Below, piece after piece: positions 1-44,299 of a stretch of DNA of 64,000 nucleotides. Under the pieces are notes generated by a model. It was not told where the DNA came from. It saw nothing but the letters and a program-made list of their open reading frames with translations, and searched no databases. Location of the stretch: the IMG/VR virus record IMGVR_UViG_3300041402_000314, positions 1 through 64,000 of that record; one strand, written 5' to 3'. The translations under genes were made by a program, and so were the position numbers. The stretch's first letter is position 1; the number at the start of each line of letters is the position of its first letter.

Positions 1-571
1 TAAGAGGCTTGATGTTAGGGATATTATCAGACTTATCACCGATCATTATCTTGATATCAAGCTGTCTCTGAGGGTCTTCTTCCTCCACGAACTCTTTTTT
101 CATAGGGTCATATAGGGAGACACCATCATGCTTCAATAGTTGAACATAGTCCTTATCAGAAGTCACGATAACACTTTTACCATTAGCTGGTAACATTCTT
201 GAAAGAACACCAATAATATCATCGGCTTCTACCCAATTTATGCGAATGATTTTGAACGGAAAAGACTTCTTGATATCTGCCGTGAACTCATCCATATAAG
301 CATAGTATTTATCCCAAGGGAAAACGTCTTGGTCGCGCTTATCTTTCCTATGAGCCTTATAATCAGCAAAGATTTTCTTTCGCCAGTAATTCTTACCGTC
401 CACCGCTATAATTATTTCAGTCGGCCTAAATTTCTTTATATTATAGAACAGGGAATTCATTACCCTATGCTTATGTAATTTGAAATCTGGATTAGGGTCA
501 TTAATAAGACTCATATCAGCAAATAAAGTACGGATACAAAGATGGTTATAGTCTATATAGAGTCTGGACAT
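1..571 (-). CDS. rnh: T4 RNase H-like 5'-3' exonuclease (FEN1/PIN fold), truncated by the window edge
   Basis: Not in the ORF track. Manual translation from ATG at 571: MSRLYIDYNHL...AVDGKNYWRKKIFADYKAHRK...VEADDIIG...VTSDKDYVQL...IGDKSDNIP; these are the acidic motifs of T4 RNase H. Confidence 0.9.
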   Translation of the reverse strand, partial: MSRLYIDYNHLCIRTLFADMSLINDPNPDFKLHKHRVMNSLFYNIKKFRPTEIIIAVDGKNYWRKKIFADYKAHRKDKRDQDVFPWDKYYAYMDEFTADIKKSFPFKIIRINWVEADDIIGVLSRMLPANGKSVIVTSDKDYVQLLKHDGVSLYDPMKKEFVEEEDPQRQLDIKIMIGDKSDNIPNIKPL

Positions 572-1026
572 TAAGCTAGATTCTCCCTTACTATTTTACT
601 AGCAAGTTTACCATCAAACATACCATCATAATTTTCTTTGATTAGACCCATCACTTTACCCATATCTTTCATAGATGAAAATCCTGAAGTCTCTATAATG
701 TCGTTAATAATGACAGTCAGCTCATCTTCCCTGAGTTGTATAGGGAGATATACGGAAAATAGTAATTTCTCGGCCTCGCATTCGGCAATTTCTACCGTAA
801 GGCTTTCATTTCCATTTTTCTTTTCCATCACTTTAATGGTCTCATCGATGCCTTTGATAAACTTCTTCACAGTCTGAATGACCTCGGCATCAGTAGAGAT
901 TCTATTAGCATCGTTCTTACCGATCATAGATGCTTCTGAATATAGGGTAGTAAGCGCAGTGGCTTTATCGGTCTCTCTTGCCTTTCTAGCTACAAGAGAG
1001 TCTTCTTTGATTTGATCTATTAACAT
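571..1026 (-). CDS. GatB/YqeY domain protein
   Basis: Helical protein with YLPIQL..DEL and MKDMGKVMG..K motifs of YqeY. ATG at 1026 follows an AGGAG RBS; the ORF track start at 1062 lies next to the promoter -10. Confidence 0.85.
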   Translation of the reverse strand: MLIDQIKEDSLVARKARETDKATALTTLYSEASMIGKNDANRISTDAEVIQTVKKFIKGIDETIKVMEKKNGNESLTVEIAECEAEKLLFSVYLPIQLREDELTVIINDIIETSGFSSMKDMGKVMGLIKENYDGMFDGKLASKIVRENLA

Positions 1027-5822: not shown

Positions 5823-5928
5823 ACATTTATTTTAATGGGCGGTAAGTCTTGGCTCTTAACCGATGGCATATTCATACCTCCTCTTTAAAGTTGGTTGCAA
5901 ATGCACTTACCGCCCGATTTTATTTTTG

Positions 5929-6001
5929 TGCGTCTGGTGGGAGTCGAACCCACTACCGTTGGTTTTAGAAACCACGACTCTAGCCGTTGAGTTACAGACG
6001 C
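5929..6001 (-). tRNA. amber suppressor tRNA(CTA)
   Basis: Canonical spacing GCGTCTG-TA-ACTC-AACGGCTA-GAGT-C-GTGGT-TTCTAAA-ACCAA-CGGTA-GTGGG-TTCGACT-CCCAC-CAGACGC-A places CTA at positions 34-36; CCA not fully encoded. Confidence 0.85.
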
Positions 6002-7737: not shown

Positions 7738-8253
7738 TTAATATACTCCTAAATCCTTAAGCATCTGGTTTATACCAAGACTCTCATGGTACTTCTTGAT
7801 GAATTGGCTGATAGTTGGTTGTTTTGGTTCATAACCTCTTTCAATGAAATGCATACCAGCTTCACTTAAGGACATATCACCTTTATAGCTGTTACACTTT
7901 TTACATGAACATACGGTATTCTCGAAAGTATTCTTACCACCTCTAGCTCTCGGAATAACATGATCTATATTAAGCTTTGACCTTCTATCTTCAGGACAAT
8001 AAACACAGGTGAAATTATCCCTCACCATAACATTTCTCTTAGTCCATACAACAGCTCTCTTATAGATACACTTGATAAGATAAACCAGTCTAATTACAAT
8101 AGGTGTCTTATACTCTTCAGAAAATGAACGTACTACTTCATCATCAGAATGCTTTACTACTTCGACTTTACCTTTAGCCATGTAGTGAAGAGCTTTCTTC
8201 AAAGACACTTTATTCAAAAAAGTGTAATCGTAGTTTAATAATATTACGTTCAT
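7738..8253 (-). CDS. HNH endonuclease (McrA/HNH_5-like)
   Basis: RDNFTCVYC, NIDHVIPRARGG, CSCKKCNSYKG. Confidence 0.9.
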   Translation of the reverse strand: MNVILLNYDYTFLNKVSLKKALHYMAKGKVEVVKHSDDEVVRSFSEEYKTPIVIRLVYLIKCIYKRAVVWTKRNVMVRDNFTCVYCPEDRRSKLNIDHVIPRARGGKNTFENTVCSCKKCNSYKGDMSLSEAGMHFIERGYEPKQPTISQFIKKYHESLGINQMLKDLGVY

Positions 8254-9833: not shown

Positions 9834-9909
9834 TGGCGACCTTGAGGGGAATCGAACCCCTAACCTATTCGCAGACAACGAACTGCTCTTCCATTTGAGC
9901 TACAAGGCC
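9834..9909 (-). tRNA. tRNA-Asp(GTC)
   Basis: GTTCG-TTGTCTG-CGAAT; G73; CCA. Confidence 0.9.
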
Positions 9910-9927
9910 ATTTAATTTATTAAAGCT

Positions 9928-9956
9928 ATTATACCAAATTCAGTTTTGTTTGTCAA
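9928..9956 (-). promoter_or_regulatory. sigma70-type promoter driving tRNA-Asp
   Basis: TTGACA-17-TATAAT. Confidence 0.85.
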
Positions 9957-9964
9957 GCTTTATT

Positions 9965-10300
9965 TTATATATTTTGCATTTGTTTTAAAGTTTTTCTTCT
10001 ATTTTTAATCCTTTTTATAAGTTCTTCAAATCTAATAATTTCTTCTACGAATGGTAATCTATCGCCTTTTTCTGCATTACATTTTTTATGAGCTAATACA
10101 TGATTGTATCTAAGTACCTTTCCCATTTTATATTTTTTAGCTACAAAATGATCTACTGTATATCCTCGGTTCCTACCTTTATTTTTAGCAAGCCACATAG
10201 GATTACCACAGTAAAAACATTCGCCTTGTTGCGCCATCATAAGTTCCATATGATATCCAGCTAATTCCATAATTTTCTCCTTCTTTGAATTATGAACCAA
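9965..10300 (-). CDS. HNH endonuclease
   Basis: QQGECFYCG, TVDHF, AHKKCNAEKG. Confidence 0.8.
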   Translation of the reverse strand: MVHNSKKEKIMELAGYHMELMMAQQGECFYCGNPMWLAKNKGRNRGYTVDHFVAKKYKMGKVLRYNHVLAHKKCNAEKGDRLPFVEEIIRFEELIKRIKNRRKTLKQMQNI

Positions 10301-10343
10301 TCATAACATGGAGAAAACTATTTGTCAAGAACTTTTTTTATTT

Positions 10344-10417
10344 TGGATGAGGTAGATGGATTCGAACCATCATTAACTCATTCAGAGTGAGTCGTCTTAC
10401 CATTGGACTATACCCCA
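10344..10417 (-). tRNA. tRNA-Gln(CTG)
   Basis: ACTCA-CTCTGAA-TGAGT; U1:A72; CCA. Confidence 0.92.
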
Positions 10418-10428
10418 AAATTTTATTT

Positions 10429-10502
10429 TGGTGGAGATTAGGGGAGTCGAACCCCTTCAAAATCAGTGCAAATGATTTTCGCATCCCGATGCATCAATCC
10501 CC
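10429..10502 (-). tRNA. tRNA-Ala(TGC)
   Basis: G3:U70, loop TTTGCAC, CCA; overlapped by the upstream CDS. Confidence 0.88.
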
Positions 10503-11043
10503 AAAATTTCCTTATTTCCATTTTCTTTATTATGTCTTCAGCCAGTAAATCGATTCCTTCATCAGTTCCACCATCATATTCTACCACACTGATCTCATGT
10601 TTGTCAAGAAGTTTTCTCAGATTTTTATCAATATCTTTCGATTCATCTTCTGTCTGCATCCTACCTATAGGATTATACTCTTTGACTCTCTTCAGGAAGA
10701 CATTCATGGTTTCAAATGAATGATGTGCCTCCATTATAAGAGTATCTAAAGCCTTTCCTACTGTTGTCTTATCCCTGTTGTAATATAGGGATAGAAGCAG
10801 CGGAGAATCGGTTATAACAACATCTACTTGACCATTTAGCCTGAATACCTTATGATGTTGTTTAGCAAATACATATATCTGGTTATCGAAGATCGCTTCA
10901 TGTCTATCCCAGACCTTATCTTTAGCATATTCACTAACATATTCAGCATTAATACCAGCCTGTTTCAACTTACTAAATACACCTGTAGCAGTAGTTGATT
11001 TACCACAACCCGGACCACCAAACAGATTAATCAATAGCATCAA
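10438..11043 (-). CDS. P-loop NadR/AAA_28-like kinase
   Basis: INLFGGPGCGKST Walker A, EYAKD, ITDSPL; C-terminus reads through tRNA-Ala. Confidence 0.8.
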   Translation of the reverse strand: MMLLINLFGGPGCGKSTTATGVFSKLKQAGINAEYVSEYAKDKVWDRHEAIFDNQIYVFAKQHHKVFRLNGQVDVVITDSPLLLSLYYNRDKTTVGKALDTLIMEAHHSFETMNVFLKRVKEYNPIGRMQTEDESKDIDKNLRKLLDKHEISVVEYDGGTDEGIDLLAEDIIKKMEIRKFWGLMHRDAKIICTDFEGVRLP

Positions 11044-18349: not shown

Positions 18350-18427
18350 TGGTACACCTACGGGGTACTGACCCCCCCCGATCTCCAACGTGAAAGGCTG
18401 GCGAATTGTCCACTATTCGATAGGTGT
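18350..18427 (-). tRNA. tRNA-Glu(TTC) with disrupted T-loop
   Basis: CCAGC-CTTTCAC-GTTGG; T-arm reads CGGGG-GGGGTCAGTA-CCCCG (G8 run); 5' end overlapped by the endonuclease CDS. Confidence 0.7.
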
Positions 18428-19312
18428 ATAATCTTTTCTCTGATAATATTCTACTTCTGGATGGTATTTTTTAATCCATCTCTTAGTTTGTGTATGGCTT
18501 AATTCCCATATATCAGCTACTTGCTGTAACCATCCGAATTTATTTTTATCGACAGATTCTAAAGTTTTTCCTCTTTTACCTATAATTTTTTGGGTCGCTT
18601 TCTGTCTCTTTTCCTTTTCTCTTTTAACCTCTAGTACCTTCTTCTCTTTTCCTGTTAGAAGTTCACAAGTTTTACTAACCTCATTGATATCACCAATAAA
18701 CTGTTCTAAATCTATTATGATAGAGTTAACATCACTCAATACCTGTTTTGCCTTAACTCTATAGACTCTCCAACCTTGAGTTATTAGAAGAGTATCTTTT
18801 TTATCGTCACTAGCTTTTCTCTCAGGTTGTTCATGTTGCCCACCATCTATTTCAACTGCTACTTTAACATTCTCGAAAGCAAAATCTACAAAATATGGAT
18901 AGAAGCTTTTCTCTCTAGTTATTTCAAACTTATCATACCATCCATGTCTTTTCACCGCATTAATAAATACCTTTTCAGGCCAACTCATTTCATTACCAGT
19001 TCGCCAAGCTGTACAACTAGGATTCGCTTTCATATATGCGAGTCGCTTTTTTCTTATTTTCTCTCTAGTCTCTTCCGAAACAGATTTCCGATCTAATAAC
19101 GTTTCGATACACTTCTTATCACCACAACTCTTCTGGAAGGATATGGATTTTCTTAATTTAGCGTCTTTCCCACATACTTCACATTTCGGGATTAAAAATT
19201 TTTTATGAACAATAACATATTCTAATAGAGAAATATCATGTTGATTTTTTAAATGAATACTTAATCCTAAGTTTGATTTAGTCTTTTTATTACATATTTT
19301 ACATTCTTCCAT
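18413..19312 (-). CDS. DUF559/Vsr-like (PD-D/ExK) endonuclease with N-terminal zinc fingers
   Basis: CKIC..HLKNQH, CEVC, YFVDFAFENVKVAVEIDGGQH, DKKDTLLITQGWRVYR. Confidence 0.85.
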   Translation of the reverse strand: MEECKICNKKTKSNLGLSIHLKNQHDISLLEYVIVHKKFLIPKCEVCGKDAKLRKSISFQKSCGDKKCIETLLDRKSVSEETREKIRKKRLAYMKANPSCTAWRTGNEMSWPEKVFINAVKRHGWYDKFEITREKSFYPYFVDFAFENVKVAVEIDGGQHEQPERKASDDKKDTLLITQGWRVYRVKAKQVLSDVNSIIIDLEQFIGDINEVSKTCELLTGKEKKVLEVKREKEKRQKATQKIIGKRGKTLESVDKNKFGWLQQVADIWELSHTQTKRWIKKYHPEVEYYQRKDYTPIE

Positions 19313-19933: not shown

Positions 19934-20006
19934 ATTATAACAAATTGTTTTCCAGAAGTCAAGCATAAAAAAAAGCCTTTCAGAAATTAAATTCTTGAAA
20001 GGCTTT
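19934..20006 (-). terminator. intrinsic terminator fused to a sigma70 promoter
   Basis: AAAGCCTTTCA/TGAAAGGCTTT + T8, then ATGC, then TTGACT-17-TATAAT. Confidence 0.85.
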
Positions 20007-20033
20007 GGTGTTAATAATTGTATAGGAGTGGTA

Positions 20034-20150
20034 TTACTCGTCAGGCCACTCCATAGATACACGAAAGCCTTTATCTTTGAACTCTTTAGGTTCAAGTATA
20101 TTCTTTTTCTCTATTGCTATGTGTTTAGATAATTCTTTCGTTATTTGCAT
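20034..20150 (-). CDS. putative attenuator leader peptide 2 (38 aa, Lys/Glu-rich)
   Basis: AAGGA RBS; MQITKELSKHIAIEKKNILEPKEFKDKGFRVSMEWPDE-TAA; late promoter TATAAATA at 20178-20185. Confidence 0.5.
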   Translation of the reverse strand: MQITKELSKHIAIEKKNILEPKEFKDKGFRVSMEWPDE

Positions 20151-20402
20151 TTCGTGTCCTTTTATTAGTGTTTCAAGTATTTATATCTTTAGAAAATTTT
20201 CTAGGGTCTCCGAAATTTATAGAGCAACCCCTACACTCATAATAAATTGTTTTATTGTGAGTTGTCAGACCCAAACTAATGATATCCACTCTACTTATAC
20301 TTCTATATCTATTATGTCCGCATATCGGACAAATAAAATCTTCCAATTTTTATACCCCTATTATACCACAACTGGTATCAGTTTGTCAAGTCTTATTATT
20401 TT

Positions 20403-20476
20403 TGGTACTCCCTGATGGTACTGCCCCACCGCTTATTGGATGTAAACCAATCGCACTACTATTATACTAAGGGAGC
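20403..20476 (-). tRNA. tRNA-Val(TAC)
   Basis: ATTGG-TTTACAT-CCAAT; T-loop GGCAGTA; CCA. Confidence 0.87.
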
Positions 20477-20482
20477 AAATAT

Positions 20483-21394
20483 TTAATCTGTCTTTAATCT
20501 AAATCTACCCATTTCAGGACAACCTTCTCTCTTGAAATGAGTTCCTTCATACCTATTTATAACACCTTTTACTACCTTACCATCGACACAATCTGAATTC
20601 TTAAGAGCCTCATATATCTTAACGGCTTCTGGAGAATACATTATGTCATTTTTGGCAAGTCCTAATTCCATTCTCTCCATTACCATGATAGCATCAAAGG
20701 TCTTATAATCACAGCCTAGTTGTGCCTCATCGGTATTATCATCGGTCACACCAAGTCCATCACTAGGAGCCTGAGTTATGATATCTTCTCTAACACCCAA
20801 TAACCTAGCTATCGTAGGTAGTTCAAATCCCTTGAATATATATTGTATCGGTGCGAGGTCTCCAACGTCTCCGTGTAGTGTCCAGAAACCAGCGAGATAT
20901 TCACTGTAATTATCTGTACTCAGAACCAGACCATCATTCAGTCTAGCCATATCATAGAGCGTCATCATTCTCAACCGAGCTTTTATATTTCCCTGTCTGA
21001 TAGCACCATGATTAATTTTACCTGCTATGATGTCGTTATGTCTTAACACATTAGGTATAAATGTTTCCATAGTTTCATCTAACCAATGGACGCTATCATA
21101 GACAGTACAATGATTTGCACCAACCCATCCAGCCTGTTCACTATGCTTATCCGTTGTCGAAAGAGGTATATGGAGTCCGATCAAAGGAACGCCTATATAT
21201 TTCTCCTGACAAAGTGCAGCTATAACCGCACTATCGAGGCCACCAGAAACACCAACAACCAAAGATTTGAGCTTATTCTTATATACATAATCAGATACAA
21301 ATCTTCGCATTCTTCCTATGATGTCTTCAGCTTGCTCATCACTTAAGGTATATTTTGGTTCAACTGCTTCGACTAATCTCTTCAACTCAGACAT
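20483..21394 (-). CDS. nadE: NH3-dependent NAD+ synthetase
   Basis: VGVSGGLDSA PP-loop, GNIKARLRMMTLY, STDNYSE, FWTLHGD, APSDGL, TDEAQLG. Confidence 0.92.
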   Translation of the reverse strand: MSELKRLVEAVEPKYTLSDEQAEDIIGRMRRFVSDYVYKNKLKSLVVGVSGGLDSAVIAALCQEKYIGVPLIGLHIPLSTTDKHSEQAGWVGANHCTVYDSVHWLDETMETFIPNVLRHNDIIAGKINHGAIRQGNIKARLRMMTLYDMARLNDGLVLSTDNYSEYLAGFWTLHGDVGDLAPIQYIFKGFELPTIARLLGVREDIITQAPSDGLGVTDDNTDEAQLGCDYKTFDAIMVMERMELGLAKNDIMYSPEAVKIYEALKNSDCVDGKVVKGVINRYEGTHFKREGCPEMGRFRLKTD

Positions 21395-21426
21395 CCCAAA
21401 CCTCCATTATCAATTAAATGTATTTT

Positions 21427-21819
21427 TCAATAATCTTTATTCTTCAAAATTTCTTCCGCACCCTCATATAGTTCTTTAGCACCTTCGATATCTCCCTCAA
21501 CCCATCTTTCGAAAGAACTATTATTAGATTGGCAAGGAACTATTATAAGTCGTCCGTCTGAATAACCTGCTCCATGAGGCCATAGTTTATATAAAGGACA
21601 ATAATCTTCACAATCCATATCACCAAACGCATGAGGTTTTCTATCAGCATATTCACAACAAAAACATTCATTTTTCACATAACCATATTTATCCCATTCA
21701 GGCCATGCCCTTTTATCATGTGATTTATTTTCATAAACCCACTTCCAAAGCTCAATAGTCAATTCTATAACTTTTTTCTTAGTCAATCTAAAAGGTTTCT
21801 GGTGATCTAAATCAAACAT
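21427..21819 (-). CDS. Cys-rich hypothetical protein
   Basis: CFCCEY...CEDYCPL; GGAG RBS. Confidence 0.6.
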   Translation of the reverse strand: MFDLDHQKPFRLTKKKVIELTIELWKWVYENKSHDKRAWPEWDKYGYVKNECFCCEYADRKPHAFGDMDCEDYCPLYKLWPHGAGYSDGRLIIVPCQSNNSSFERWVEGDIEGAKELYEGAEEILKNKDY

Positions 21820-21845
21820 ATTTCATATCTCCTAATCAATATTGT

Positions 21846-22061
21846 TTAAAACCAATTTCCTTGCGAATCTTGCATAACTTCTTTTCCACATTTCGAACAT
21901 GTAGCAAGGGCAGAGCATCCATCAAAACTATTATTACCACCACTTCCATTATGCCATCCGAATGTCGAGCAGCTATAATGAGTACCTTTAAATCTGTCTA
22001 TCAGACAAAGAATGAATGGTAATAAAAATACCATAATCAAAATAATTAAAATAATTTTCAT
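21846..22061 (-). CDS. small membrane-anchored zinc-finger protein
   Basis: N-terminal hydrophobic helix; CSTFGWH...CSKCG. Confidence 0.6.
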   Translation of the reverse strand: MKIILIILIMVFLLPFILCLIDRFKGTHYSCSTFGWHNGSGGNNSFDGCSALATCSKCGKEVMQDSQGNWF

Positions 22062-22347
22062 GGGTTCTCCTCAAAAAATAGTGTATTGACCGTTCTCTTC
22101 TTCAACTTTCCTAATATATTCTTTGAGCTTTTTTACAGTTTTTTCCCGAAGAATTAACTTACCTTTATGGTAAAGATCATATCCCTCTTCTTTCATATGA
22201 TAACAATTATATTTATCAGTCACCGCCTTTATATTCCAAAGATAACCCATAACATTATCTGGTTTTTCTCTAGGAAAGTAATGATTACCATCATCTACAT
22301 AATGTGATCGTTGGTTTCTACTATATTCCCATTCAAGTTCTATCATT

Positions 22348-22539
22348 TTATTTCTCTTTTGGGTGTATGAACACCGTTGTTTTTTCTGGTGGTTTTGGTT
22401 CACATCTACTACAATGTCTTACTATTTCAAAATGTTCTGGACTATGACATTCACATTTAATATCATAGTAATAATATTTTCTACTTAGTTCAGAACTCTG
22501 TCCGCAAATATCACATACCCCGACTTCTATCTCACCCAT
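22348..22539 (-). CDS. small Cys-rich protein
   Basis: CDIC...CECH...HCSRC. Confidence 0.55.
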   Translation of the reverse strand: MGEIEVGVCDICGQSSELSRKYYYYDIKCECHSPEHFEIVRHCSRCEPKPPEKTTVFIHPKEK

Positions 22540-23011
22540 TTGACGTTCCCCAGATATTATACGGATTCTTTATCAAATTCGAATTAAGATATCTCGCATC
22601 ATCCGTAACTTCTTCTGTAACCCATTTAGGTTTCGCAAAGGTCTGATCTTCAGATTCTAATTCTATCTCTGCTACTATTAGTCCTTCGTTATCACCCCTA
22701 AATACATCGATTTCCCATGTCATACCAAAAACGACATATTCTAACCTAGTCTTCTCTAAAACACATTCACATTGTCCTAAAAGTCTCTCGGCATCGGCTA
22801 TCGGAATAGATAGTTCATATTCTACTCGCGTAATAGATTTATCACTCGATTTATAGGTCAAGAAGGCATCGTTACCGCTAGTTCTAACTCTTAATACTTT
22901 AAGACCAGACTCCATGAGATATCCTTGCCTGATTTTATGTATTTTATTACATGTATCACAAGACGGTAAATTAACATGGTCTACCAAAAACTTTCTTTCA
23001 ATTTCTACCAT
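22532..23011 (-). CDS. CYTH domain protein (adenylate cyclase/triphosphatase-like)
   Basis: EIERKFLV, IRQGYL, RVR, LTYK, EKTR, WEIDVF, AEIEL, YLNSNL. Confidence 0.9.
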   Translation of the reverse strand: MVEIERKFLVDHVNLPSCDTCNKIHKIRQGYLMESGLKVLRVRTSGNDAFLTYKSSDKSITRVEYELSIPIADAERLLGQCECVLEKTRLEYVVFGMTWEIDVFRGDNEGLIVAEIELESEDQTFAKPKWVTEEVTDDARYLNSNLIKNPYNIWGTSNG

Positions 23012-23032
23012 CTCAATCCTCTTTCAATTTTT

Positions 23033-23120
23033 TGGCGGTGAGGGTGGGAGTCGAACCCACGCACCTGTTACAGCCTAACGGTTTAGCAAACCGTCCTCTT
23101 AACCACTTGAGTACCCCACC
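23033..23120 (-). tRNA. tRNA-Ser(GCT)
   Basis: ACGGT-TTGCTAA-ACCGT, long variable arm, G73, CCA. Confidence 0.93.
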
Positions 23121-23280
23121 TAAATTATAATCTATATCCACACACTCTACAAACCATTTTAATCTCGAATTCAGTTTTACCTATCTGAACTTTGACTAAT
23201 CCAATTTCTTCAGCTTTACAGTGAGGACATTTCTTACCAGCTATTATTATATTAATATTTCTCTCACTCATTTAAAAAGT

Positions 23281-23309
23281 ATTATACTACATCCTTATCT
23301 GTTTGTCAA
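23281..23309 (-). promoter_or_regulatory. sigma70-type promoter
   Basis: TTGACA-17-TATAAT. Confidence 0.8.
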
Positions 23310-24181
23310 GTCCTATATAGACAGTTTTTAATAATATATCCCAACACATCATTATCCACCAACCGTTTAGCCATCGGAATATTCTGTGTATCTATAGCAC
23401 TTCTAACCACTGTAGACGAACAATCTATTGGAGCATCGGCATCTACCAGCATATGAGGTTCTTTCAGGAACCACGAGCTACTTGTTATATTCAAATCTTC
23501 TTCAGCTCTCGGAACAACTACAAAGGGTATTCTTCTTTCCAGTTCATCCCAACCAACCCATTTATTGGTGGTCATAGCATTATCAGCTCCCATTATGAAA
23601 GAGAACTGGTAATTATCATACTCAGGGTCATCGAGGATGCGATTCACGCAGTTTAAAGTCTCTCCCTTGAGCATGTGCCTTATTTCATAATCAAAAGCCT
23701 TTATACGTCCATCTACGGCTACAGCCATCTCTACCATTTTCAATCTTTGTTCTGGAGAAGTCATTTCCTTTCCGAACAGATGTTGGTAGCAAGGCATCAA
23801 CCAGACTTCATCAAATTTACCTGTAGCATCCAGAACCAATTGAGCTGTTTCTATATGACCTTTAGTAACAGGGTCAAAAGCTCCACCCAATATGGCTACC
23901 TTAGTCTTACGGCCTAATGATTTATATTGCTGTTCTCTTCTCTTTATCTTCTCATGAGCCATAGCTATGACATTAGATGCGTCCTCGCCCATTTCAGAGA
24001 TACCAGCTAGAACAGAACAAAGCAGATCGCCATATTCTTCTTTGAGATGATTTATATCAAGAAATCTACCGACCTCTTCTGCTTCTCTCTGGATATCCTT
24101 AACTCTTTCCGTTAATGGAGTCCTACCGAACATCTTTTGGAAGAGTTCATAATTCCTGTCTTGAAGGTCTTTTATACTCAT
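23306..24181 (-). CDS. nadD: MazG-like domain fused to NadD/NMNAT nucleotidyltransferase
   Basis: N-terminal REAEEV...EEYGDLL (MazG-like); C-terminal AILGGAFDPVTKGH (HxGH), FIMGAD, CSSTVVR. Probable ATG at 24181; the ORF track extends to 24283. Confidence 0.85.
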   Translation of the reverse strand: MSIKDLQDRNYELFQKMFGRTPLTERVKDIQREAEEVGRFLDINHLKEEYGDLLCSVLAGISEMGEDASNVIAMAHEKIKRREQQYKSLGRKTKVAILGGAFDPVTKGHIETAQLVLDATGKFDEVWLMPCYQHLFGKEMTSPEQRLKMVEMAVAVDGRIKAFDYEIRHMLKGETLNCVNRILDDPEYDNYQFSFIMGADNAMTTNKWVGWDELERRIPFVVVPRAEEDLNITSSSWFLKEPHMLVDADAPIDCSSTVVRSAIDTQNIPMAKRLVDNDVLGYIIKNCLYRT

Positions 24182-24355
24182 AGTTAATCCACAAATATCT
24201 CTAAAGGTTTTATCAGATAAATCCCTAATCATAGGCATTAATATTTTAGGAATTTCTTCATCCACAGTTAATCCCACTACCAACTATCATCATTATTAAT
24301 CCAGCGATAATGATGATAGTACCAAATATCAATTCAAACAGTCTCCATTTGTCCA

Positions 24356-24580
24356 TTATTTTATCACCCAAGCGTCAACAACACCCTTTATACGACCTGT
24401 TTGAAGTGCTTCAGAATACCCCCTTAACATACCTTCTTCGATGGTTCTCACTAATCTATCACCACATTTATCGAAGACGGTTTGGGCGAATGTTTCCTTA
24501 TCCTCTTCGGATGCCCAATCAGGACAAATATTATCCAAAAATTCTAAGATCGTTTTCTTATATTTGATATCAGTTTCCAT
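24356..24580 (-). CDS. hypothetical protein
   Basis: GAGGAG RBS. Confidence 0.55.
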   Translation of the reverse strand: METDIKYKKTILEFLDNICPDWASEEDKETFAQTVFDKCGDRLVRTIEEGMLRGYSEALQTGRIKGVVDAWVIK

Positions 24581-24645
24581 AAACGTTTCTCCTCAATTTT
24601 CAAACCATTATATTGTATATCAAATCAAAAGTCAAGTATTAATTT

Positions 24646-24720
24646 TGGAGCGGATATCGGAATTCGAATCCGACCTTTAAACTTGGCAAGCTTACGTGCT
24701 ACCACTAACACTATATCCGC
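24646..24720 (-). tRNA. tRNA-Gly(GCC)
   Basis: TAAGC-TTGCCAA-GTTTA; U73; CCA. Confidence 0.9.
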
Positions 24721-24726
24721 AAATTT

Positions 24727-24805
24727 TGGAGCGGATGGGGCGAGTCGAACGCCTTATTTACAGTTTGGAAAACTGCTTACCAATACCCTTGGCTTAACCA
24801 CCCGC
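24727..24805 (-). tRNA. tRNA-Gly(TCC) with enlarged D region
   Basis: GCAGT-TTTCCAA-ACTGT; GCGGGTG/CATCCGC-T-CCA; D region refolded as GCCAA-GGGTA-TTGGT. Confidence 0.8.
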
Positions 24806-24997
24806 ATTATCTAAACATTCTTTACATTTAAAAATTTCTGTACCATCATACATTTCAGTTTTAGAGTCGATTTTCCATAACCCCATACCAAACAATATAC
24901 AACTACTATCTTGCAAAAACCTACATATAACATATGCTCCTTCGGCATTCAAACTTCTACAAAGCTTACCATCTGGAACTTGAACTTGAACTAACAT
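24794..24997 (-). CDS. small Cys-rich protein, paralog-like to 8579..8782
   Basis: VQVPDGKLC...CRFL..CILF...KCKECL; stop codon lies inside tRNA-Gly(TCC). Confidence 0.5.
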   Translation of the reverse strand: MLVQVQVPDGKLCRSLNAEGAYVICRFLQDSSCILFGMGLWKIDSKTEMYDGTEIFKCKECLDNAGG

Positions 24998-25018
24998 TTT
25001 ATTCGCCTTTTTATTTTT

Positions 25019-27452: not shown

Positions 27453-28511
27453 TTACATTTGTTCTTGTTGGAAGAAATAATCTCTTACTACCTTAGAGAC
27501 TTTGTTGTTTACTTCCTTGACATCCAGACCAGCATCGGTAATGATGTCGAGGTCTTCCTTTACGATATCACCAATAACCCATCTGATGAAATCTCCCATT
27601 CCTTTACGATCTATCTCTCCGCCATTCAGAGTATCGAATGTTTCCTGTATGCCTTGCTCCATACGGAAAGCAGGAGTAATCTTATTTACCACTTCATTAA
27701 CAAGATTCATTTTAGCTTCGTCTACTTTAGGCAGCTTCTTTACTTTACTGGTAGAATGCTTTTCTCCCTTGACCTTAAAGCGAAAGTCATTGCCGTTAAA
27801 AACGCCTTTCCAGACCACACCCTCACCAACACCTTCATTTCCTAATTGGAAGGCCACAGGGCATCTTTCCTCGACTTCCAAAGTGATTTCATTCAACTTA
27901 TTCTGAAAAGCCTCTGGTTTATTGAAATCTATTTTTATTTCGAAGGTAGGAAATTCATCTATAAAGTAAATGTTATGATCATTAATTTTACTACCTCTAT
28001 TATTCGGACATACTTTACTTAAGTCTAACCAGAATCCATCTTCTTCATCATCATGAGACGTTATCTTAACATCGAAGATAACGAACATCTTATCAAGCCC
28101 ATTGACCCCAACACCTTTCTGAATAGACCCACCGCTGACTTCCCCGAAAATAGAAATGATGTTATTAATAGTATCGATATTAAAATCCTTAATTATTTCA
28201 GCTACGATATTATTGAATGAAACTTTTCTCGCATGTACGAAACAAGAAAACCCACAATTATCTTTTTCTGGGGTGATGATATTTTTCCTAGATTGCGTCC
28301 AAATACCACTTTCAGCATTAAAGCATACTGCACCATTACTTCCATGAATTTTAGTGGTTCCTGTTAATTTCAGAACTGGTTTCGGTCTCATCCCATCATA
28401 TACGGGTTCACCATCTTCTCCTATTCCTACAAAACTAGCAGAATGGCTTATATGTTTAACAATATTTCTATACTGTTCTATACTTGGGTACTTAATAAAC
28501 TTCTTTTCCAT
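27453..28511 (-). CDS. ATP-dependent RNA ligase (Rnl2-like)
   Basis: KYPSI, TKIHGSN (motif I KxxG), IFGEV, VIFDV, GEGVVW, FKVKGEKH. Confidence 0.88.
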   Translation of the reverse strand: MEKKFIKYPSIEQYRNIVKHISHSASFVGIGEDGEPVYDGMRPKPVLKLTGTTKIHGSNGAVCFNAESGIWTQSRKNIITPEKDNCGFSCFVHARKVSFNNIVAEIIKDFNIDTINNIISIFGEVSGGSIQKGVGVNGLDKMFVIFDVKITSHDDEEDGFWLDLSKVCPNNRGSKINDHNIYFIDEFPTFEIKIDFNKPEAFQNKLNEITLEVEERCPVAFQLGNEGVGEGVVWKGVFNGNDFRFKVKGEKHSTSKVKKLPKVDEAKMNLVNEVVNKITPAFRMEQGIQETFDTLNGGEIDRKGMGDFIRWVIGDIVKEDLDIITDAGLDVKEVNNKVSKVVRDYFFQQEQM

Positions 28512-28579: not shown

Positions 28580-29365
28580 ATGTTTCATTATGTTTATAGA
28601 ATAACCAATATAACGCCTCGATTAGAAAAATATTATATTGGAGTTCGATCTTCTTTAGATGAACCAAATGATGATAATTATTGGTCTTCATCGAAATATT
28701 TAAAGGAAGATATTAGTACCTTTGGTTTATCAAATTTTAAAAAGAAAATCATCAAAATTTTCAACAACCGAAAAGAAGCCATTGATTTCGAAATCAAAAT
28801 TCAAACTAAATTACAAGTTCATCACCATCCCTTATTTTATAATAAATCTACACAACCTTCAAATAAATTCAACAATCAAGGAAATCCAGAAATTATTAAA
28901 AGAAAAGTTCAAACAATGCAAAATACTATCATTGATGGTAAAACACTTTATCAAATAGCCGTCGCTAAAGGTATTGAAACTAAAAAGACAAAAATTTTAC
29001 CAAATGGTTTAACTGTATCAGAAAATCAAGTAGCTAATTTTATCGCCAATTTAGATATTCCCGATTCTAAAACTGGATTGACTCTTAGACAAAAATTACG
29101 GAAACCAAAAAACAATACATCTAATTATACTGGCAATCCAAAAACAGTCATTTTATATGATAGTAAAGATAATATCAAACATACTATCAATGATGGATTC
29201 CAAAAATACTGTCTTTTGTATAATTTACCATATACTGCTTTCAGAAAATCATACGGCGAACAAATACCAGTATATGAAAATATAACAAATCCCCGTACTA
29301 TTACCCTATTAAAGAACAAAAAATATTGGCAATATAAAGGTTGGTATGCCATTTTAAAGGTTTAG
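28580..29365 (+). CDS. GIY-YIG (Seg-like) homing endonuclease
   Basis: HYVYRITN...YYIGVRS, YWSSS, AIDFEIK, FYNK; opposite strand to neighbours; TATAAATA late promoter upstream. Confidence 0.85.
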   Translation: MFHYVYRITNITPRLEKYYIGVRSSLDEPNDDNYWSSSKYLKEDISTFGLSNFKKKIIKIFNNRKEAIDFEIKIQTKLQVHHHPLFYNKSTQPSNKFNNQGNPEIIKRKVQTMQNTIIDGKTLYQIAVAKGIETKKTKILPNGLTVSENQVANFIANLDIPDSKTGLTLRQKLRKPKNNTSNYTGNPKTVILYDSKDNIKHTINDGFQKYCLLYNLPYTAFRKSYGEQIPVYENITNPRTITLLKNKKYWQYKGWYAILKV

Positions 29366-43249: not shown

Positions 43250-43348
43250 TTAAAAGAGAGTAAGCTAAGTAGTTGGTGCTACTTAGCAACAGGTGGAGTG
43301 ATTTACCTGCTGTCCTCTCTCATACCTATTTATATAAGGAGTGGTGTC

Positions 43349-44299
43349 ATGTCAACAACTATAAATCCCGAAAATCCAATTTTTTACACTTACTTAATTT
43401 TAGACCCGAGATATAAAGGAACCTTCGTCTATGATGATGGTAAACTAATATCAGATTATTTACCTATCTATGGGGGAAAGGGATATGATGATAGATGTAA
43501 TGACCATTTGAGAGATGCTATCAATTCTATTAAAAAATCTGATAAATTAAATCTTCTTAGAAAAATATTAGAAGAAGGATTTGAACCTAAAATTTTTAAA
43601 GTATTAGAAAACGTAACTGAGAAAGAAGCATTTGCTAAAGAAAGATATGTAATAAGAGTAATTGGTAGACTAGATAAAGGATTGGGAACCTTACTCAATA
43701 AAACCGATGGCGGGGAAGGTTGGGGTGGTTTTATTAGAACCAGAGAACATAAAAGAAAAATAAGCGAAGCTAATAAAGGCCAAGATAGTGATAAATTGTG
43801 GTATAATGATGGTAAAAATGAAAGAAGATATAAAGAAGACAAACAACCAGAGGATTGGGTCTTGGGTAGATTAAAATTTTCAGACAAACACATAAAATCC
43901 TTGAGCAAGATATCTAAAAATAAAATATGGTATAATGATGGTAAAAACTTGACAAGATGTCTTATCGGAGAACAGCCAATAGGATGGGTGGAGGGTCCAT
44001 TACCAATGAAAAGAGAAACCAAAGAAAAACTTAGTAAAATATTTAAAAATGTGCCGAATTTATTTAGAAAGGGGCGACGTTATTATAACGATGGTGAATT
44101 AGAGCGATTTTATTTAGAGAATCAACAACCAGATGGGTGGGTATTGGGTAGATTGAGTAAAGGACGTAAACATCATTGTTATAAAAAATCTCCTAAAAAT
44201 AAAGGGAAGCGTTGTTATAATAACGGAAGTATAAACAAATGTTTTCTCGAAGACAAACAACCAGAGGATTGGGTCTTGGGTATGCTTAGAAAATTATGA
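43349..44299 (+). CDS. GIY-YIG-type homing endonuclease with NUMOD3 and repeated C-terminal DNA-binding modules
   Basis: YTYLILDPR..YGGKG, LLNKTDGGEG, EHKRKISEA, about four (W/Y)YNDG..QPxxWVxG repeats; ATG at 43349 after AAGGAG. Confidence 0.82.
   Translation: MSTTINPENPIFYTYLILDPRYKGTFVYDDGKLISDYLPIYGGKGYDDRCNDHLRDAINSIKKSDKLNLLRKILEEGFEPKIFKVLENVTEKEAFAKERYVIRVIGRLDKGLGTLLNKTDGGEGWGGFIRTREHKRKISEANKGQDSDKLWYNDGKNERRYKEDKQPEDWVLGRLKFSDKHIKSLSKISKNKIWYNDGKNLTRCLIGEQPIGWVEGPLPMKRETKEKLSKIFKNVPNLFRKGRRYYNDGELERFYLENQQPDGWVLGRLSKGRKHHCYKKSPKNKGKRCYNNGSINKCFLEDKQPEDWVLGMLRKL

What the first reader, a model, noticed from the sequence alone, without database searches (positions are those of the whole stretch)
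20483..24283. Phage NAD+ module: NadE plus a MazG-NadD fusion
Seen: complete NadE and a NadD-type adenylyltransferase fused to a MazG-like N-terminal domain, 2 kb apart, with a CYTH enzyme between. A NadR-like kinase (10438), an NDT-like protein (1547) and a SLOG protein (32543) lie elsewhere in the window. Established: phage NARP1 (Adps+Namat) and NARP2 (Nampt+Nmnat) rebuild NAD+ against Thoeris/SIR2/TIR defences. Inference: NadD+NadE would be a different, deamidated (NaMN to NaAD to NAD) route. The MazG domain might hydrolyse alarmones or damaged nucleotides. No NaPRT/Nampt is visible in this window.
Basis: partly seen in the sequence, partly recalled or inferred. Interest (0 to 1): 0.66.

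Follow-up and report, generated by a model that had tools for sequence, protein, structure and literature searches.

The report
Phage NadE plus virus-specific MazG-NadD fusion
A 204-kb T4-like phage from marine sediment encodes the last two enzymes of NAD+ synthesis, one of them fused to a MazG nucleotide-pyrophosphatase domain in an arrangement found almost only in large phages; phage NAD+ genes of this type are already known, but I found no description of the fusion.

Summary
ORF 20483-21394(-) is a single-domain, ammonia-type NAD synthetase (NadE). ORF 23306-24181/24283(-) is a MazG domain fused in frame to a bacterial-type NadD. A NeuTTM-like CYTH gene lies between them.

The 204-kb phage record has no NaPRT/Nampt, Prs, PncA, PnuC or NadK. 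It does encode an NAD-dependent DNA ligase.

The fusion is a large, conserved family. It has over 500 clusters at 90% identity, and the catalytic motifs of both domains are invariant. The closest ESM Atlas cluster is 96% viral. Only three MAG contigs among the 80 best hits from 185,579 species genomes carry it.

In relatives, the fusion travels with PncB-type NaPRT, PncA and NadE. This supports the deamidated route NaMN to NaAD to NAD+.

That route was already reported from sequence analysis in "NAD-jumbo phages" (PMC11662467). So the pathway is a known kind, and the fusion is the new variant.

A counter-defence role and the MazG substrate remain inference. The "NadR-like kinase" is not specifically supported. 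CYTH is conserved only in this phage's close clade.

The parts
23306..24181 (-). MazG-NadD fusion gene. The probable start is ATG 24181, giving 291 aa. The longest ORF runs to TTG 24283, and a database gene call starts at GTG 24265.
   Evidence: AF2 model pLDDT 91.6.
23909..24181 (-). MazG-type all-alpha NTP pyrophosphohydrolase domain. It has four helices and the metal motif E33-x2-E36-x12-E49-x2-D52, plus K78 and R82 (numbering of the 291-aa protein).
   Evidence: PF03819 is matched by 21 of 21 family members. The PDB profile's best hit is E. coli MazG 3cra at 1.8e-7. All of the top 50 Foldseek hits are MazG, YpjD, HisE, DCTPP1 or MazZ folds. The listed residues are invariant in 41 sequences.
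23306..23908 (-). NadD-type nicotinate-mononucleotide adenylyltransferase domain, with motifs GGAFDPVTKGH and SSTVVR.
   Evidence: The 11 NCBIfam hits scoring 33-104 bits are all nadD models. Foldseek gives TM 0.84-0.90 to Bacillus, Enterococcus and Mycobacterium NadD.
23033..23120 (-). tRNA-Ser(GCT) between the fusion and CYTH. It belongs to a 28-gene tRNA array.
22532..23011 (-). CYTH / triphosphate-tunnel enzyme, closest to the Nitrosomonas NE1496 (NeuTTM) inorganic triphosphatase. It is conserved between the fusion and NadE only in this phage's close clade.
   Evidence: It is 92% identical in L159 and present in L005 and L160. It is unlinked in other records.
21427..22539 (-). Four small ORFs with no recognised family (130, 71, 110 and 63 aa). 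This interval varies among relatives.
20483..21394 (-). NadE, a single-domain (ammonia-type) NAD+ synthetase with PP-loop SGGLDS.
24607..24635 (-). Sigma-70-like promoter match (TTGACT-17-TATAAT) upstream of the small ORF and the fusion. This is a consensus match only.
23281..23309 (-). Perfect sigma-70 consensus (TTGACA-17-TATAAT) just after the fusion's stop codon and upstream of tRNA-Ser, CYTH and NadE. This is a consensus match only.

Best explanation
The phage encodes the two terminal enzymes shared by de novo and Preiss-Handler NAD+ synthesis.

Proposed mechanism:
- The NadD domain of the fusion adenylylates host-made nicotinate mononucleotide (NaMN + ATP -> NaAD + PPi).
- The ammonia-type NadE amidates NaAD to NAD+.
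- Both genes sit in a tRNA-rich region that contains sigma-70-like promoter matches, so they may be transcribed by the host polymerase. The pair would then raise flux through the last steps of NAD+ synthesis in the infected cell.

Why the phage would need this:
- It keeps NAD+ available for phage needs. The genome encodes an NAD-dependent DNA ligase.
- It would also refill NAD+ when host NADase defences break it down. In that case the host's PncA and PncB would have to turn the released nicotinamide into NaMN, because this phage carries neither enzyme.

The fused MazG domain keeps every catalytic residue and is predicted to be an active NTP pyrophosphohydrolase working beside NadD. Its substrate is unknown. 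The most likely guess is that it clears non-canonical or by-product nucleotides that compete at ATP-using NAD(P) enzymes.

Shown here: domain identities, motif conservation, family distribution and co-occurrence. Inferred: substrates, timing of expression and any counter-defence effect.
For: Enzyme assignments:
- NadE scores above the curated cut-off and has an intact PP-loop.
- The NadD fold matches solved NadDs at TM 0.84-0.90, with (T)xGH and SxTxxR motifs intact and invariant.
- The MazG EXXE-12-EXXD motif is invariant in 41 homologues at about 45-50% identity.

Pathway context in relatives:
- Of 13 fusion-bearing viral records that are at least 65% complete, 10 carry a NAPRTase-family gene and 8 carry NadE.
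- Nine of 10 PRTases typed are PncB (TIGR01514, 343-447 bits).
- PncA is frequent.
- Clusters occur, for example fusion-PncB-PncA-NadE within 10 kb on G018/L028, and fusion-PncA-PncB on L069.
- MazG-NadD-NAD kinase triple fusions exist, one directly downstream of a Gln-type NadE.
- Fusion-NadE linkage is kept in clade relatives at 88, 76 and 70% identity.

NAD+ consumer:
- The phage's own LigA-type ligase lies at genome 82864-84735.
- Among those 13 records, 7 of 8 with NadE also have LigA, against 1 of 5 without NadE. My Fisher one-sided p is about 0.03, not corrected for phylogeny.

Against: - There is no biochemical or expression evidence, and no RNA run holds the region.
- TIGR00482 scores just below its cut-off.
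- This phage lacks PncA and PncB, so it cannot itself recycle nicotinamide. None of the 13 well-covered relatives shows NadE without a PRTase, so this combination is unusual or a gene is missing. CheckV estimates 89% completeness, although the record's ends join into one open frame.
- Three near-complete relatives carry the fusion with neither NadE nor a PRTase. The fusion therefore has value on its own.
- NadE's closest solved relatives include the Francisella enzyme 3fiu, which I recall works as an NMN synthetase. NaAD specificity is therefore not proven.
Confidence: 0.62

Rival explanations
1. Amidated variant (Francisella-type order). NadE acts as an NMN synthetase (NaMN -> NMN), and the NadD domain then adenylylates NMN to NAD+. 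NMN might also come from nicotinamide riboside through the AAA_28 kinase.
For: NadE belongs to the short NadE subgroup. Solved members of that subgroup include Francisella 3fiu (E 2e-18, close to the best hit 3p52 at 9e-21). A clade relative carries a PnuC-like fragment and a 5'-nucleotidase between CYTH and NadE. Homologues of the AAA_28 protein lie about 5 kb from NadD clusters in two other phages.
Against: The adenylyltransferase is NadD-type by sequence and by fold, not NadM or NadR. Relatives pair it with PncB, whose product is NaMN, and with NadE. The AAA_28 protein's PHROG family is annotated thymidylate kinase, and it has no NadR hit among solved structures. No PnuC was found in this genome.
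Confidence: 0.12
2. A dedicated fourth NAD+ reconstitution pathway against NADase defences (Thoeris, SIR2, TIR, DSR). The MazG domain removes a defence-derived or stress nucleotide while NadD and NadE rebuild NAD+.
For: Three phage NAD+ reconstitution pathways have been shown to work as counter-defences. A 2026 preprint reports phage proteins that both degrade ADPR-based signals and feed NAD+ synthesis. The fusion is virus-restricted and widespread. Complete PncA-PncB-NadD-NadE sets occur in relatives.
Against: No experiment exists. I found no paper linking NadD and NadE to counter-defence. This phage cannot convert nicotinamide itself. No defence system or host is known for it. The association with LigA gives a housekeeping reason.
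Confidence: 0.2
3. The fusion's main job is nucleotide-pool sanitation or regulation, not NAD+ supply. The adenylyltransferase domain would act on another substrate, or the genes would be dispensable cargo in a hypervariable tRNA and homing-endonuclease region.
For: The region is full of small ORFs, HNH, GIY-YIG and DUF559 endonucleases and tRNAs. Three near-complete relatives have the fusion with no other NAD gene.
Against: Both active sites are under strong purifying selection across hundreds of sequences. The 11 NCBIfam hits scoring 33-104 bits and all top structural matches are NadD. Genomic and fusion partners are repeatedly NAD(P) enzymes.
Confidence: 0.06

Closest known systems
Preiss-Handler gene sets (pncB-nadD-nadE) of 'NAD-jumbo phages' (Microbiome 2024, PMC11662467)
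   Same: These are phage-encoded NadD and NadE read as the deamidated route. That paper also lists the nadD of the 735-kb phage LR756501, which is this protein's best phage-database hit (42% identity). NAD-consuming phage genes such as ligase occur alongside.
   Different: That work is bioinformatic and does not mention a MazG domain (0 occurrences). This phage has only the last two steps, with no pncB or pncA. It is a 204-kb T4-like phage from marine sediment or cold seep, not from gut.
NARP2 (Nampt + Nmnat; KVP40 NadV/NatV type)
   Same: A two-enzyme phage module that ends in an adenylyltransferase making a pyridine dinucleotide.
   Different: NARP2 starts from nicotinamide through Nampt and needs no NadE. 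Here there is no NAPRTase-family gene, the transferase is NadD-type and NadE is present.
NARP3 (PnuC + bifunctional NadR; PMC13464706)
   Same: It rebuilds NAD+ from a salvaged precursor using a phage adenylyltransferase.
   Different: This genome has no PnuC. The adenylyltransferase is not NadR-type. The AAA_28 protein is a separate gene 13 kb away and of uncertain specificity.
NARP1 (Adps + Namat)
   Same: It is a phage NAD+ restoration system.
   Different: No Prs-like gene and no NAPRTase-family gene were found. The chemistry is unrelated.
Adenylyltransferase-pyrophosphatase fusions: NadM-Nudix and NadD-YqeK (HD domain), e.g. NCBIfam PRK07152
   Same: An NMN/NaMN adenylyltransferase is joined to a nucleotide pyrophosphatase domain. 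PRK07152 is the top NCBIfam hit for the NadD part. Nudix genes sit next to stand-alone NadD in other phages.
   Different: The partner here is an N-terminal all-alpha MazG domain, a different fold from Nudix or HD. What the Nudix and YqeK partners do is from my own knowledge and was not tested here.
Stand-alone phage MazG / MazZ (cyanophage MazG, S-2L MazZ 7ody)
   Same: The same four-helix NTP-PPase fold and metal motif.
   Different: The domain here forms its own subfamily. It was found only fused in frame to NadD, or to NadD plus NAD kinase, in the loci examined.

Membership tests
NadD (nicotinate-nucleotide adenylyltransferase, TIGR00482) | Score above the curated equivalog cut-off | tested here: not met
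   104.1 bits against a cut-off of 112.45. The 11 NCBIfam hits scoring 33-104 bits are all nadD models. This is a narrow miss in a fused, viral, divergent sequence.
NadD (nicotinate-nucleotide adenylyltransferase, TIGR00482) | Nucleotidyltransferase motifs (H/T)xGH and SxTxxR | tested here: met
   GGAFDPVTKGH and SSTVVR are present. G99, G100, F102, H109, S255 and S256 are invariant in 41 homologues.
NadD (nicotinate-nucleotide adenylyltransferase, TIGR00482) | NadD fold rather than NadM, NadR or PPAT | tested here: met
   The 49 best Foldseek hits are bacterial or Plasmodium NadD (NaMNAT) structures, and rank 50 is an NMNAT entry. TMt to the best Bacillus, Enterococcus and Mycobacterium NadDs is 0.84-0.90.
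NadD (nicotinate-nucleotide adenylyltransferase, TIGR00482) | Preference for NaMN over NMN | not testable with these tools
   Only context bears on this: relatives pair it with PncB and NadE.
NadE (NH3-dependent NAD+ synthetase, TIGR00552) | Score above the curated cut-off, and a PP-loop SGGxDS | tested here: met
   143.4 bits against 63.65. S50-G-G-L-D-S55 is present.
NadE (NH3-dependent NAD+ synthetase, TIGR00552) | Single domain without a CN-hydrolase glutaminase | tested here: met
   The protein is 303 aa, and only PF02540 plus a weak PP-loop cross-hit are found. Glutamine-type models match only in their synthetase part.
NadE (NH3-dependent NAD+ synthetase, TIGR00552) | NaAD rather than NaMN as substrate | not testable with these tools
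   The solved relatives include both ordinary NadEs and Francisella 3fiu.
MazG (PF03819, all-alpha NTP pyrophosphohydrolase) | Profile match above the gathering score | tested here: met
   The domain alone scores 23.9 bits against 22. All 21 family members match, with a best E-value of 1.4e-9. Within the whole protein the score is 20.5 bits.
MazG (PF03819, all-alpha NTP pyrophosphohydrolase) | EXXE-(12-28)-EXXD metal motif and a four-helix fold | tested here: met
   E33, E36, E49 and D52 are invariant. The model has four helices at pLDDT 91. All of the top 50 PDB fold hits are from this superfamily.
MazG (PF03819, all-alpha NTP pyrophosphohydrolase) | NTP pyrophosphohydrolase activity and its substrate | not testable with these tools
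CYTH / triphosphate tunnel metalloenzyme (PF01928) | Profile match above the cut-off and an N-terminal ExExK motif | tested here: met
   54.9 bits against 23.2. The sequence begins MVEIERK. The closest solved protein is NE1496, 2fbl, at 2.4e-18.
Complete Preiss-Handler pathway (PncA, PncB, NadD, NadE) | All four enzymes encoded | tested here: not met
   Only NadD and NadE are present. PF04095 has no match and PF00857 has one hit at 11 bits, below its cut-off, in the 204-kb record. Relatives do have all four.
NARP1 / NARP2 / NARP3 | Adps + Namat; Nampt + Nmnat; PnuC + NadR | tested here: not met
   No Prs-like gene, no NAPRTase-family gene and no PnuC gene were found in the record.

The most novel reading that the evidence does not exclude
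MazG-NadD is a virus-specific bifunctional enzyme. Its MazG domain would destroy a nucleotide made by host defence or stress. Candidates are ITP/dITP, p4A/Ap4A by-products (with the neighbouring NeuTTM-like CYTH clearing the tripolyphosphate released), an alarmone, or an ADPR-derived signal. Meanwhile the NadD domain and NadE rebuild NAD+. Together with PncA and PncB in relatives, this would be a fourth, Preiss-Handler-type NAD+ reconstitution pathway of large phages.
Probability: 0.15. Interest if true: 0.78.

Novelty: new variant of a known kind. Interest (0 to 1): 0.5.

Why it matters
NAD+ is a central battleground between bacteria and phages, and three phage NAD+ reconstitution pathways have been proven experimentally. 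The NadD/NadE (Preiss-Handler) genes of large phages have only been catalogued.

This work shows that in many of these phages NadD is not a plain bacterial copy. It is a conserved, virus-restricted fusion to an apparently active MazG pyrophosphatase. That fusion is sometimes extended by an NAD kinase.

This gives a concrete pair of proteins to test:
- Does a deamidated route rescue phages from NADase defences, or does it mainly feed the phage's own NAD-dependent ligase?
- Which nucleotide does a MazG domain need to remove next to an NAD(P)-making enzyme?

If the answers are ordinary, the finding is one more auxiliary metabolic module.

Tried and rejected
- Megablast of 20000-25000 against 50,697 phage records found nothing, so there is no close cultured relative.
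- PHROGs has no family for the fusion.
- CYTH as a general member of the module is rejected. It occurs in only 3 of 46 related records and is unlinked there. It is conserved only in the close clade.
- 'NadR-like kinase' is not supported specifically. The protein matches AAA_28 only, its PHROG family is annotated thymidylate kinase, and no solved NadR is hit by sequence.
- An alternative genetic code was considered because of a CTA-anticodon tRNA. It is rejected: table 11 gives 90% coding, and TAG ends 43 of 383 ORFs. No other code was used.
- Tpt1, Macro, SIR2, NAD kinase and PnuC were sought in the genome and none was found.
- I tried to show that the record is a closed circle. The ends join into a 342-codon open frame. 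Only the N-terminal half hits a PHROG family, an exonuclease, so this is suggestive and not proven.
- MazG as an NAD+/NaAD pyrophosphatase appears only as a pathway-map placement in NMN-engineering papers, without a direct assay. I did not adopt it.
- No RNA run holds the region. Read laying and complex prediction were not used, because no claim here depends on them.

Full report
**1. Setting**

The window is the first 64 kb of an IMG/VR virus record of 204,149 bp. CheckV estimates 89% completeness and no terminal repeats were found. Under the standard code the record is 90% coding.

The window carries T4-type replication genes: a UvsW-like helicase, an SbcC-like ATPase (AAA_23/SMC_N) next to a metallophosphoesterase, family-B DNA polymerase, a RecA/UvsX-like protein, ribonucleotide reductase and a sigma factor. 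The polymerase is only about 35% identical to those of T4-like cyanophages. Megablast of the region finds no phage record.

Near-identical DNA occurs in one marine-sediment metagenome. Partial matches occur in cold-seep metagenomes. No RNA run holds the region.

Positions 5.2-26.7 kb on the minus strand hold 28 tRNA genes. These are interleaved with small ORFs and with HNH, GIY-YIG and DUF559 endonucleases. The finding lies inside this array.

**2.

- *NadE.* ORF 20483-21394(-) is a 303-aa NadE. It matches PF02540 at 1.1e-41 and TIGR00552 at 143 bits against a cut-off of 63.65. It has the PP-loop SGGLDS and no glutaminase domain. Its closest solved relatives are short ammonia-dependent NadEs: 3p52, 2e18, 1xng, and also Francisella 3fiu.
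- *Fusion.* ORF 23306-24283(-) has two domains.
  - Residues 126-325 are NadD. The 11 NCBIfam hits scoring 33-104 bits are all nadD models, and TIGR00482 scores 104 bits, just under its cut-off of 112.
  - The AlphaFold model (pLDDT 91.6) superposes on Bacillus, Enterococcus and Mycobacterium NadD structures at TM 0.84-0.90.
  - The GGAFDPVTKGH and SSTVVR motifs are present.
  - Residues 35-125 are a MazG domain. Alone it scores 23.9 bits against a PF03819 cut-off of 22.
  - A profile of the domain finds E. coli MazG, a Thermotoga MazG-related protein and YpjD among solved structures.
  - The separate model is a four-helix bundle. All of its 50 best structural matches are all-alpha NTP pyrophosphohydrolases.
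- *Start codon.* The longest ORF overlaps a small hydrophobic upstream ORF, and homologues are about 290 aa. The true start is therefore probably ATG 24181.
- *Between the two enzymes.* A CYTH gene (22532-23011) with an ExExK motif, closest to the NE1496 triphosphatase, lies here. So do tRNA-Ser and four small ORFs with no recognised family.

**3. The rest of the genome**

The whole record has no NAPRTase-family gene (neither PncB nor Nampt), no Prs, no convincing PncA, no PnuC and no NAD kinase. It does encode an NAD-dependent (LigA-type) DNA ligase at 82.9-84.7 kb and a Nudix hydrolase at 97.2 kb. No Tpt1, Macro or SIR2 gene was found.

The two ends of the record join into one 342-codon open frame. 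A relative's contig is almost the same length, 204,679 bp. The record may therefore be essentially complete, but this is not proven.

**4. The fusion is a family, and a viral one**

- More than 500 clusters (at 90% identity) of proteins about 290 aa long match the fusion end to end. Most are annotated with both PF03819 and PF01467, and some lie on contigs of up to 669 kb.
- In an alignment of 41 members at about 45-50% identity, two sets of residues are invariant:
  - the MazG metal motif E33-x2-E36-x12-E49-x2-D52, together with K78 and R82;
  - the NadD motifs.
- A scan of IMG/VR gave 59 loci. About 38 carry the full fusion and about 20 carry a stand-alone NadD.
- A profile of the MazG domain finds it in those loci only fused in frame to NadD.
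- Searching 1.84 billion representative proteins with that profile gives 223 clusters. Most are proteins of fusion length (about 280-330 aa) or shorter pieces, and a few are longer.
- The longer ones include MazG-NadD-NAD kinase triple fusions.
- Among 185,579 species genomes, only three of the 80 best loci have the full fusion, and all three are MAG contigs.
  - One has 22% GC, looks like a phage, and has PncA and PncB beside the fusion.
  - One encodes a 779-aa MazG-NadD-NAD kinase protein directly downstream of a glutamine-type NadE.
- The closest ESM Atlas cluster is 96% viral.
- PHROGs has no family for the fusion.
- In a quick maximum-likelihood tree of NadD domains, viral sequences fall on one side (SH-aLRT 94). 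The fusions sit in one subclade (support 87) with a few NadD-only rows inside it. This is compatible with one origin and some losses, but it is not strongly supported.

**5. What travels with it**

I searched the whole records behind 46 viral loci, 28 of them with the fusion. The table gives counts for the 13 fusion-bearing records that are at least 65% complete.

| Feature | Records |
|---|---|
| NAPRTase-family gene | 10 of 13 |
| NadE | 8 of 13 |
| Neither of the two | 3 of 13 |
| NadE without a PRTase | 0 of 13 |

One is a longer protein of the PRK09198 type.
- PncA-like genes are frequent.
- Loose clusters occur, for example fusion-PncB-PncA-NadE within 10 kb on one contig.
- Stand-alone viral NadDs often sit in tight PncB-(Nudix)-NadD-NadE-PncA operons.
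- CYTH is found in only 3 of the 46 records and is unlinked there.
- In this phage's own clade the order fusion-CYTH-...-NadE is kept in relatives whose fusion is 88, 76 and 70% identical. The CYTH of the 76% relative is 92% identical, more conserved than its neighbours. That relative also has a 5'-nucleotidase and an 85-aa PnuC-like fragment in the interval.
- NAD-dependent ligase is present in 7 of the 8 records with NadE and in 1 of the 5 without it. My Fisher one-sided p is about 0.03, with no phylogenetic correction.

**6. Mechanism**

The best-supported reading is that the phage supplies the last two steps of NAD+ synthesis. NaMN plus ATP gives NaAD through the NadD domain. NaAD plus ATP and ammonia gives NAD+ through NadE. 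The repeated pairing of this fusion family with PncB and PncA in relatives argues that NaMN is its physiological substrate.

This phage has no PRTase, so NaMN must come from the host. The phage therefore boosts flux rather than creating an independent pathway.

Sigma-70 consensus matches stand upstream of the fusion. A perfect one stands upstream of the tRNA-Ser-CYTH-NadE stretch. These hint at host-polymerase transcription, but they are consensus matches only.

The reason for wanting NAD+ is inferred. A direct consumer, LigA, is encoded by the phage. Refilling NAD+ after NADase defences is plausible by analogy with NARP1-3, but it is untested.

The MazG domain is predicted to be catalytically competent, and its substrate is unknown. 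It is found joined only to ATP-using NAD(P) enzymes (NadD and NAD kinase). This points to a role tied to their nucleotide substrates or by-products.

I hold only as ideas the clearing of dATP/ITP-type competitors, and the clearing of p4A/Ap4A-type by-products with the neighbouring NeuTTM-like CYTH removing the tripolyphosphate. The analogy with NadM-Nudix and NadD-YqeK fusions comes from my own knowledge.

**7. What is known already**

A 2024 paper on gut and environmental jumbo phages reports NAD+ synthesis pathways in 174 such phages. These include pncB-nadD-nadE clusters read as the Preiss-Handler route. It also notes the nadD of the 735-kb phage, which is this protein's best hit in the phage collection at 42% identity. 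It does not mention MazG.

The papers on NARP1 and NARP2 and on NARP3 do not involve NadD or NadE. I found no paper describing a MazG-NadD fusion, and none with an experimental test of NadD and NadE as counter-defence. MazG appears in NMN-engineering papers only as a pathway-map enzyme.

**8. Verdict**

The genes are real and correctly named. The deamidated-route reading is supported by context but is a known kind. The new element is the conserved, virus-restricted MazG-NadD architecture and its extension with NAD kinase. The counter-defence role and the function of MazG remain to be tested.

No alternative genetic code was used.

Noticed in passing
window 5246-26742, minus strand: An array of 28 tRNA genes includes one with a CTA anticodon (5928-6001; ARAGORN labels it Pyl), which is amber-suppressor-like. 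TAG still ends 43 of 383 called ORFs, and table 11 gives 90% coding. There is no sign of genome-wide recoding.
   Followed up: partly
window 1-595 and genome 203719-204149: Joining the two ends of the 204,149-bp record gives one 342-codon open frame on the minus strand. Its N-terminal half matches phrog_107, an exonuclease. The record may therefore be a complete, circularly permuted genome despite CheckV's 89% estimate.
   Followed up: partly
window 27453-28511 and 1993-2709: An RNA ligase (PF09414) and a calcineurin-like phosphoesterase (phrog_246; it also hits an RNA-ligase-associated PHROG) flank the tRNA array. This may be an RNA or tRNA repair set. No Tpt1 was found in the genome.
   Followed up: no
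window 22532-23011 versus L159:9321-9794: The CYTH protein is 92% identical in a relative whose fusion (76%) and NadE (62%) are much more diverged. This suggests unusually strong constraint or a recent exchange.
   Followed up: no
L159:9898-10909: In a clade relative, the interval between CYTH and NadE holds a 5'-nucleotidase (NT5C) and an 85-aa PnuC-like fragment. An AAA_33 kinase lies just upstream of the fusion. None of these is in the window.
   Followed up: no
L070:4942-7281 (Schlesneria MAG contig); P0150, P0160, P0152: MazG-NadD-NAD kinase triple fusions of about 630-780 aa exist. In L070, one lies directly downstream of a glutamine-type NadE on a contig with 53% GC that may be cellular.
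   Followed up: partly
L037, L038, L039 at about 9908-10875: Three IMG/VR records share a fusion gene whose MazG domain is split over two reading frames. This could be a frameshift or a sequencing error.
   Followed up: no
window 21574-21790 versus genome 157814-158039: Part of the Cys-rich 130-aa ORF between CYTH and NadE has a 66%-identical DNA copy elsewhere in the genome, so a paralogue exists.
   Followed up: no
window 18413-19312, 7738-8253, 28580-29365, 43298-44299: Several homing-endonuclease-like genes (DUF559/MTES_1575, HNH, and two GIY-YIG) are scattered through the region. This fits a hypervariable accessory zone.
   Followed up: no
genome 97189-97647: The phage's Nudix hydrolase is homologous (32-43% identity) to Nudix genes that sit next to, or within about 4 kb of, stand-alone NadD (or NadD-like genes) in six other viral loci (L052, L058, L060, L065-L067). 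Here it lies 73 kb from the fusion.
   Followed up: partly
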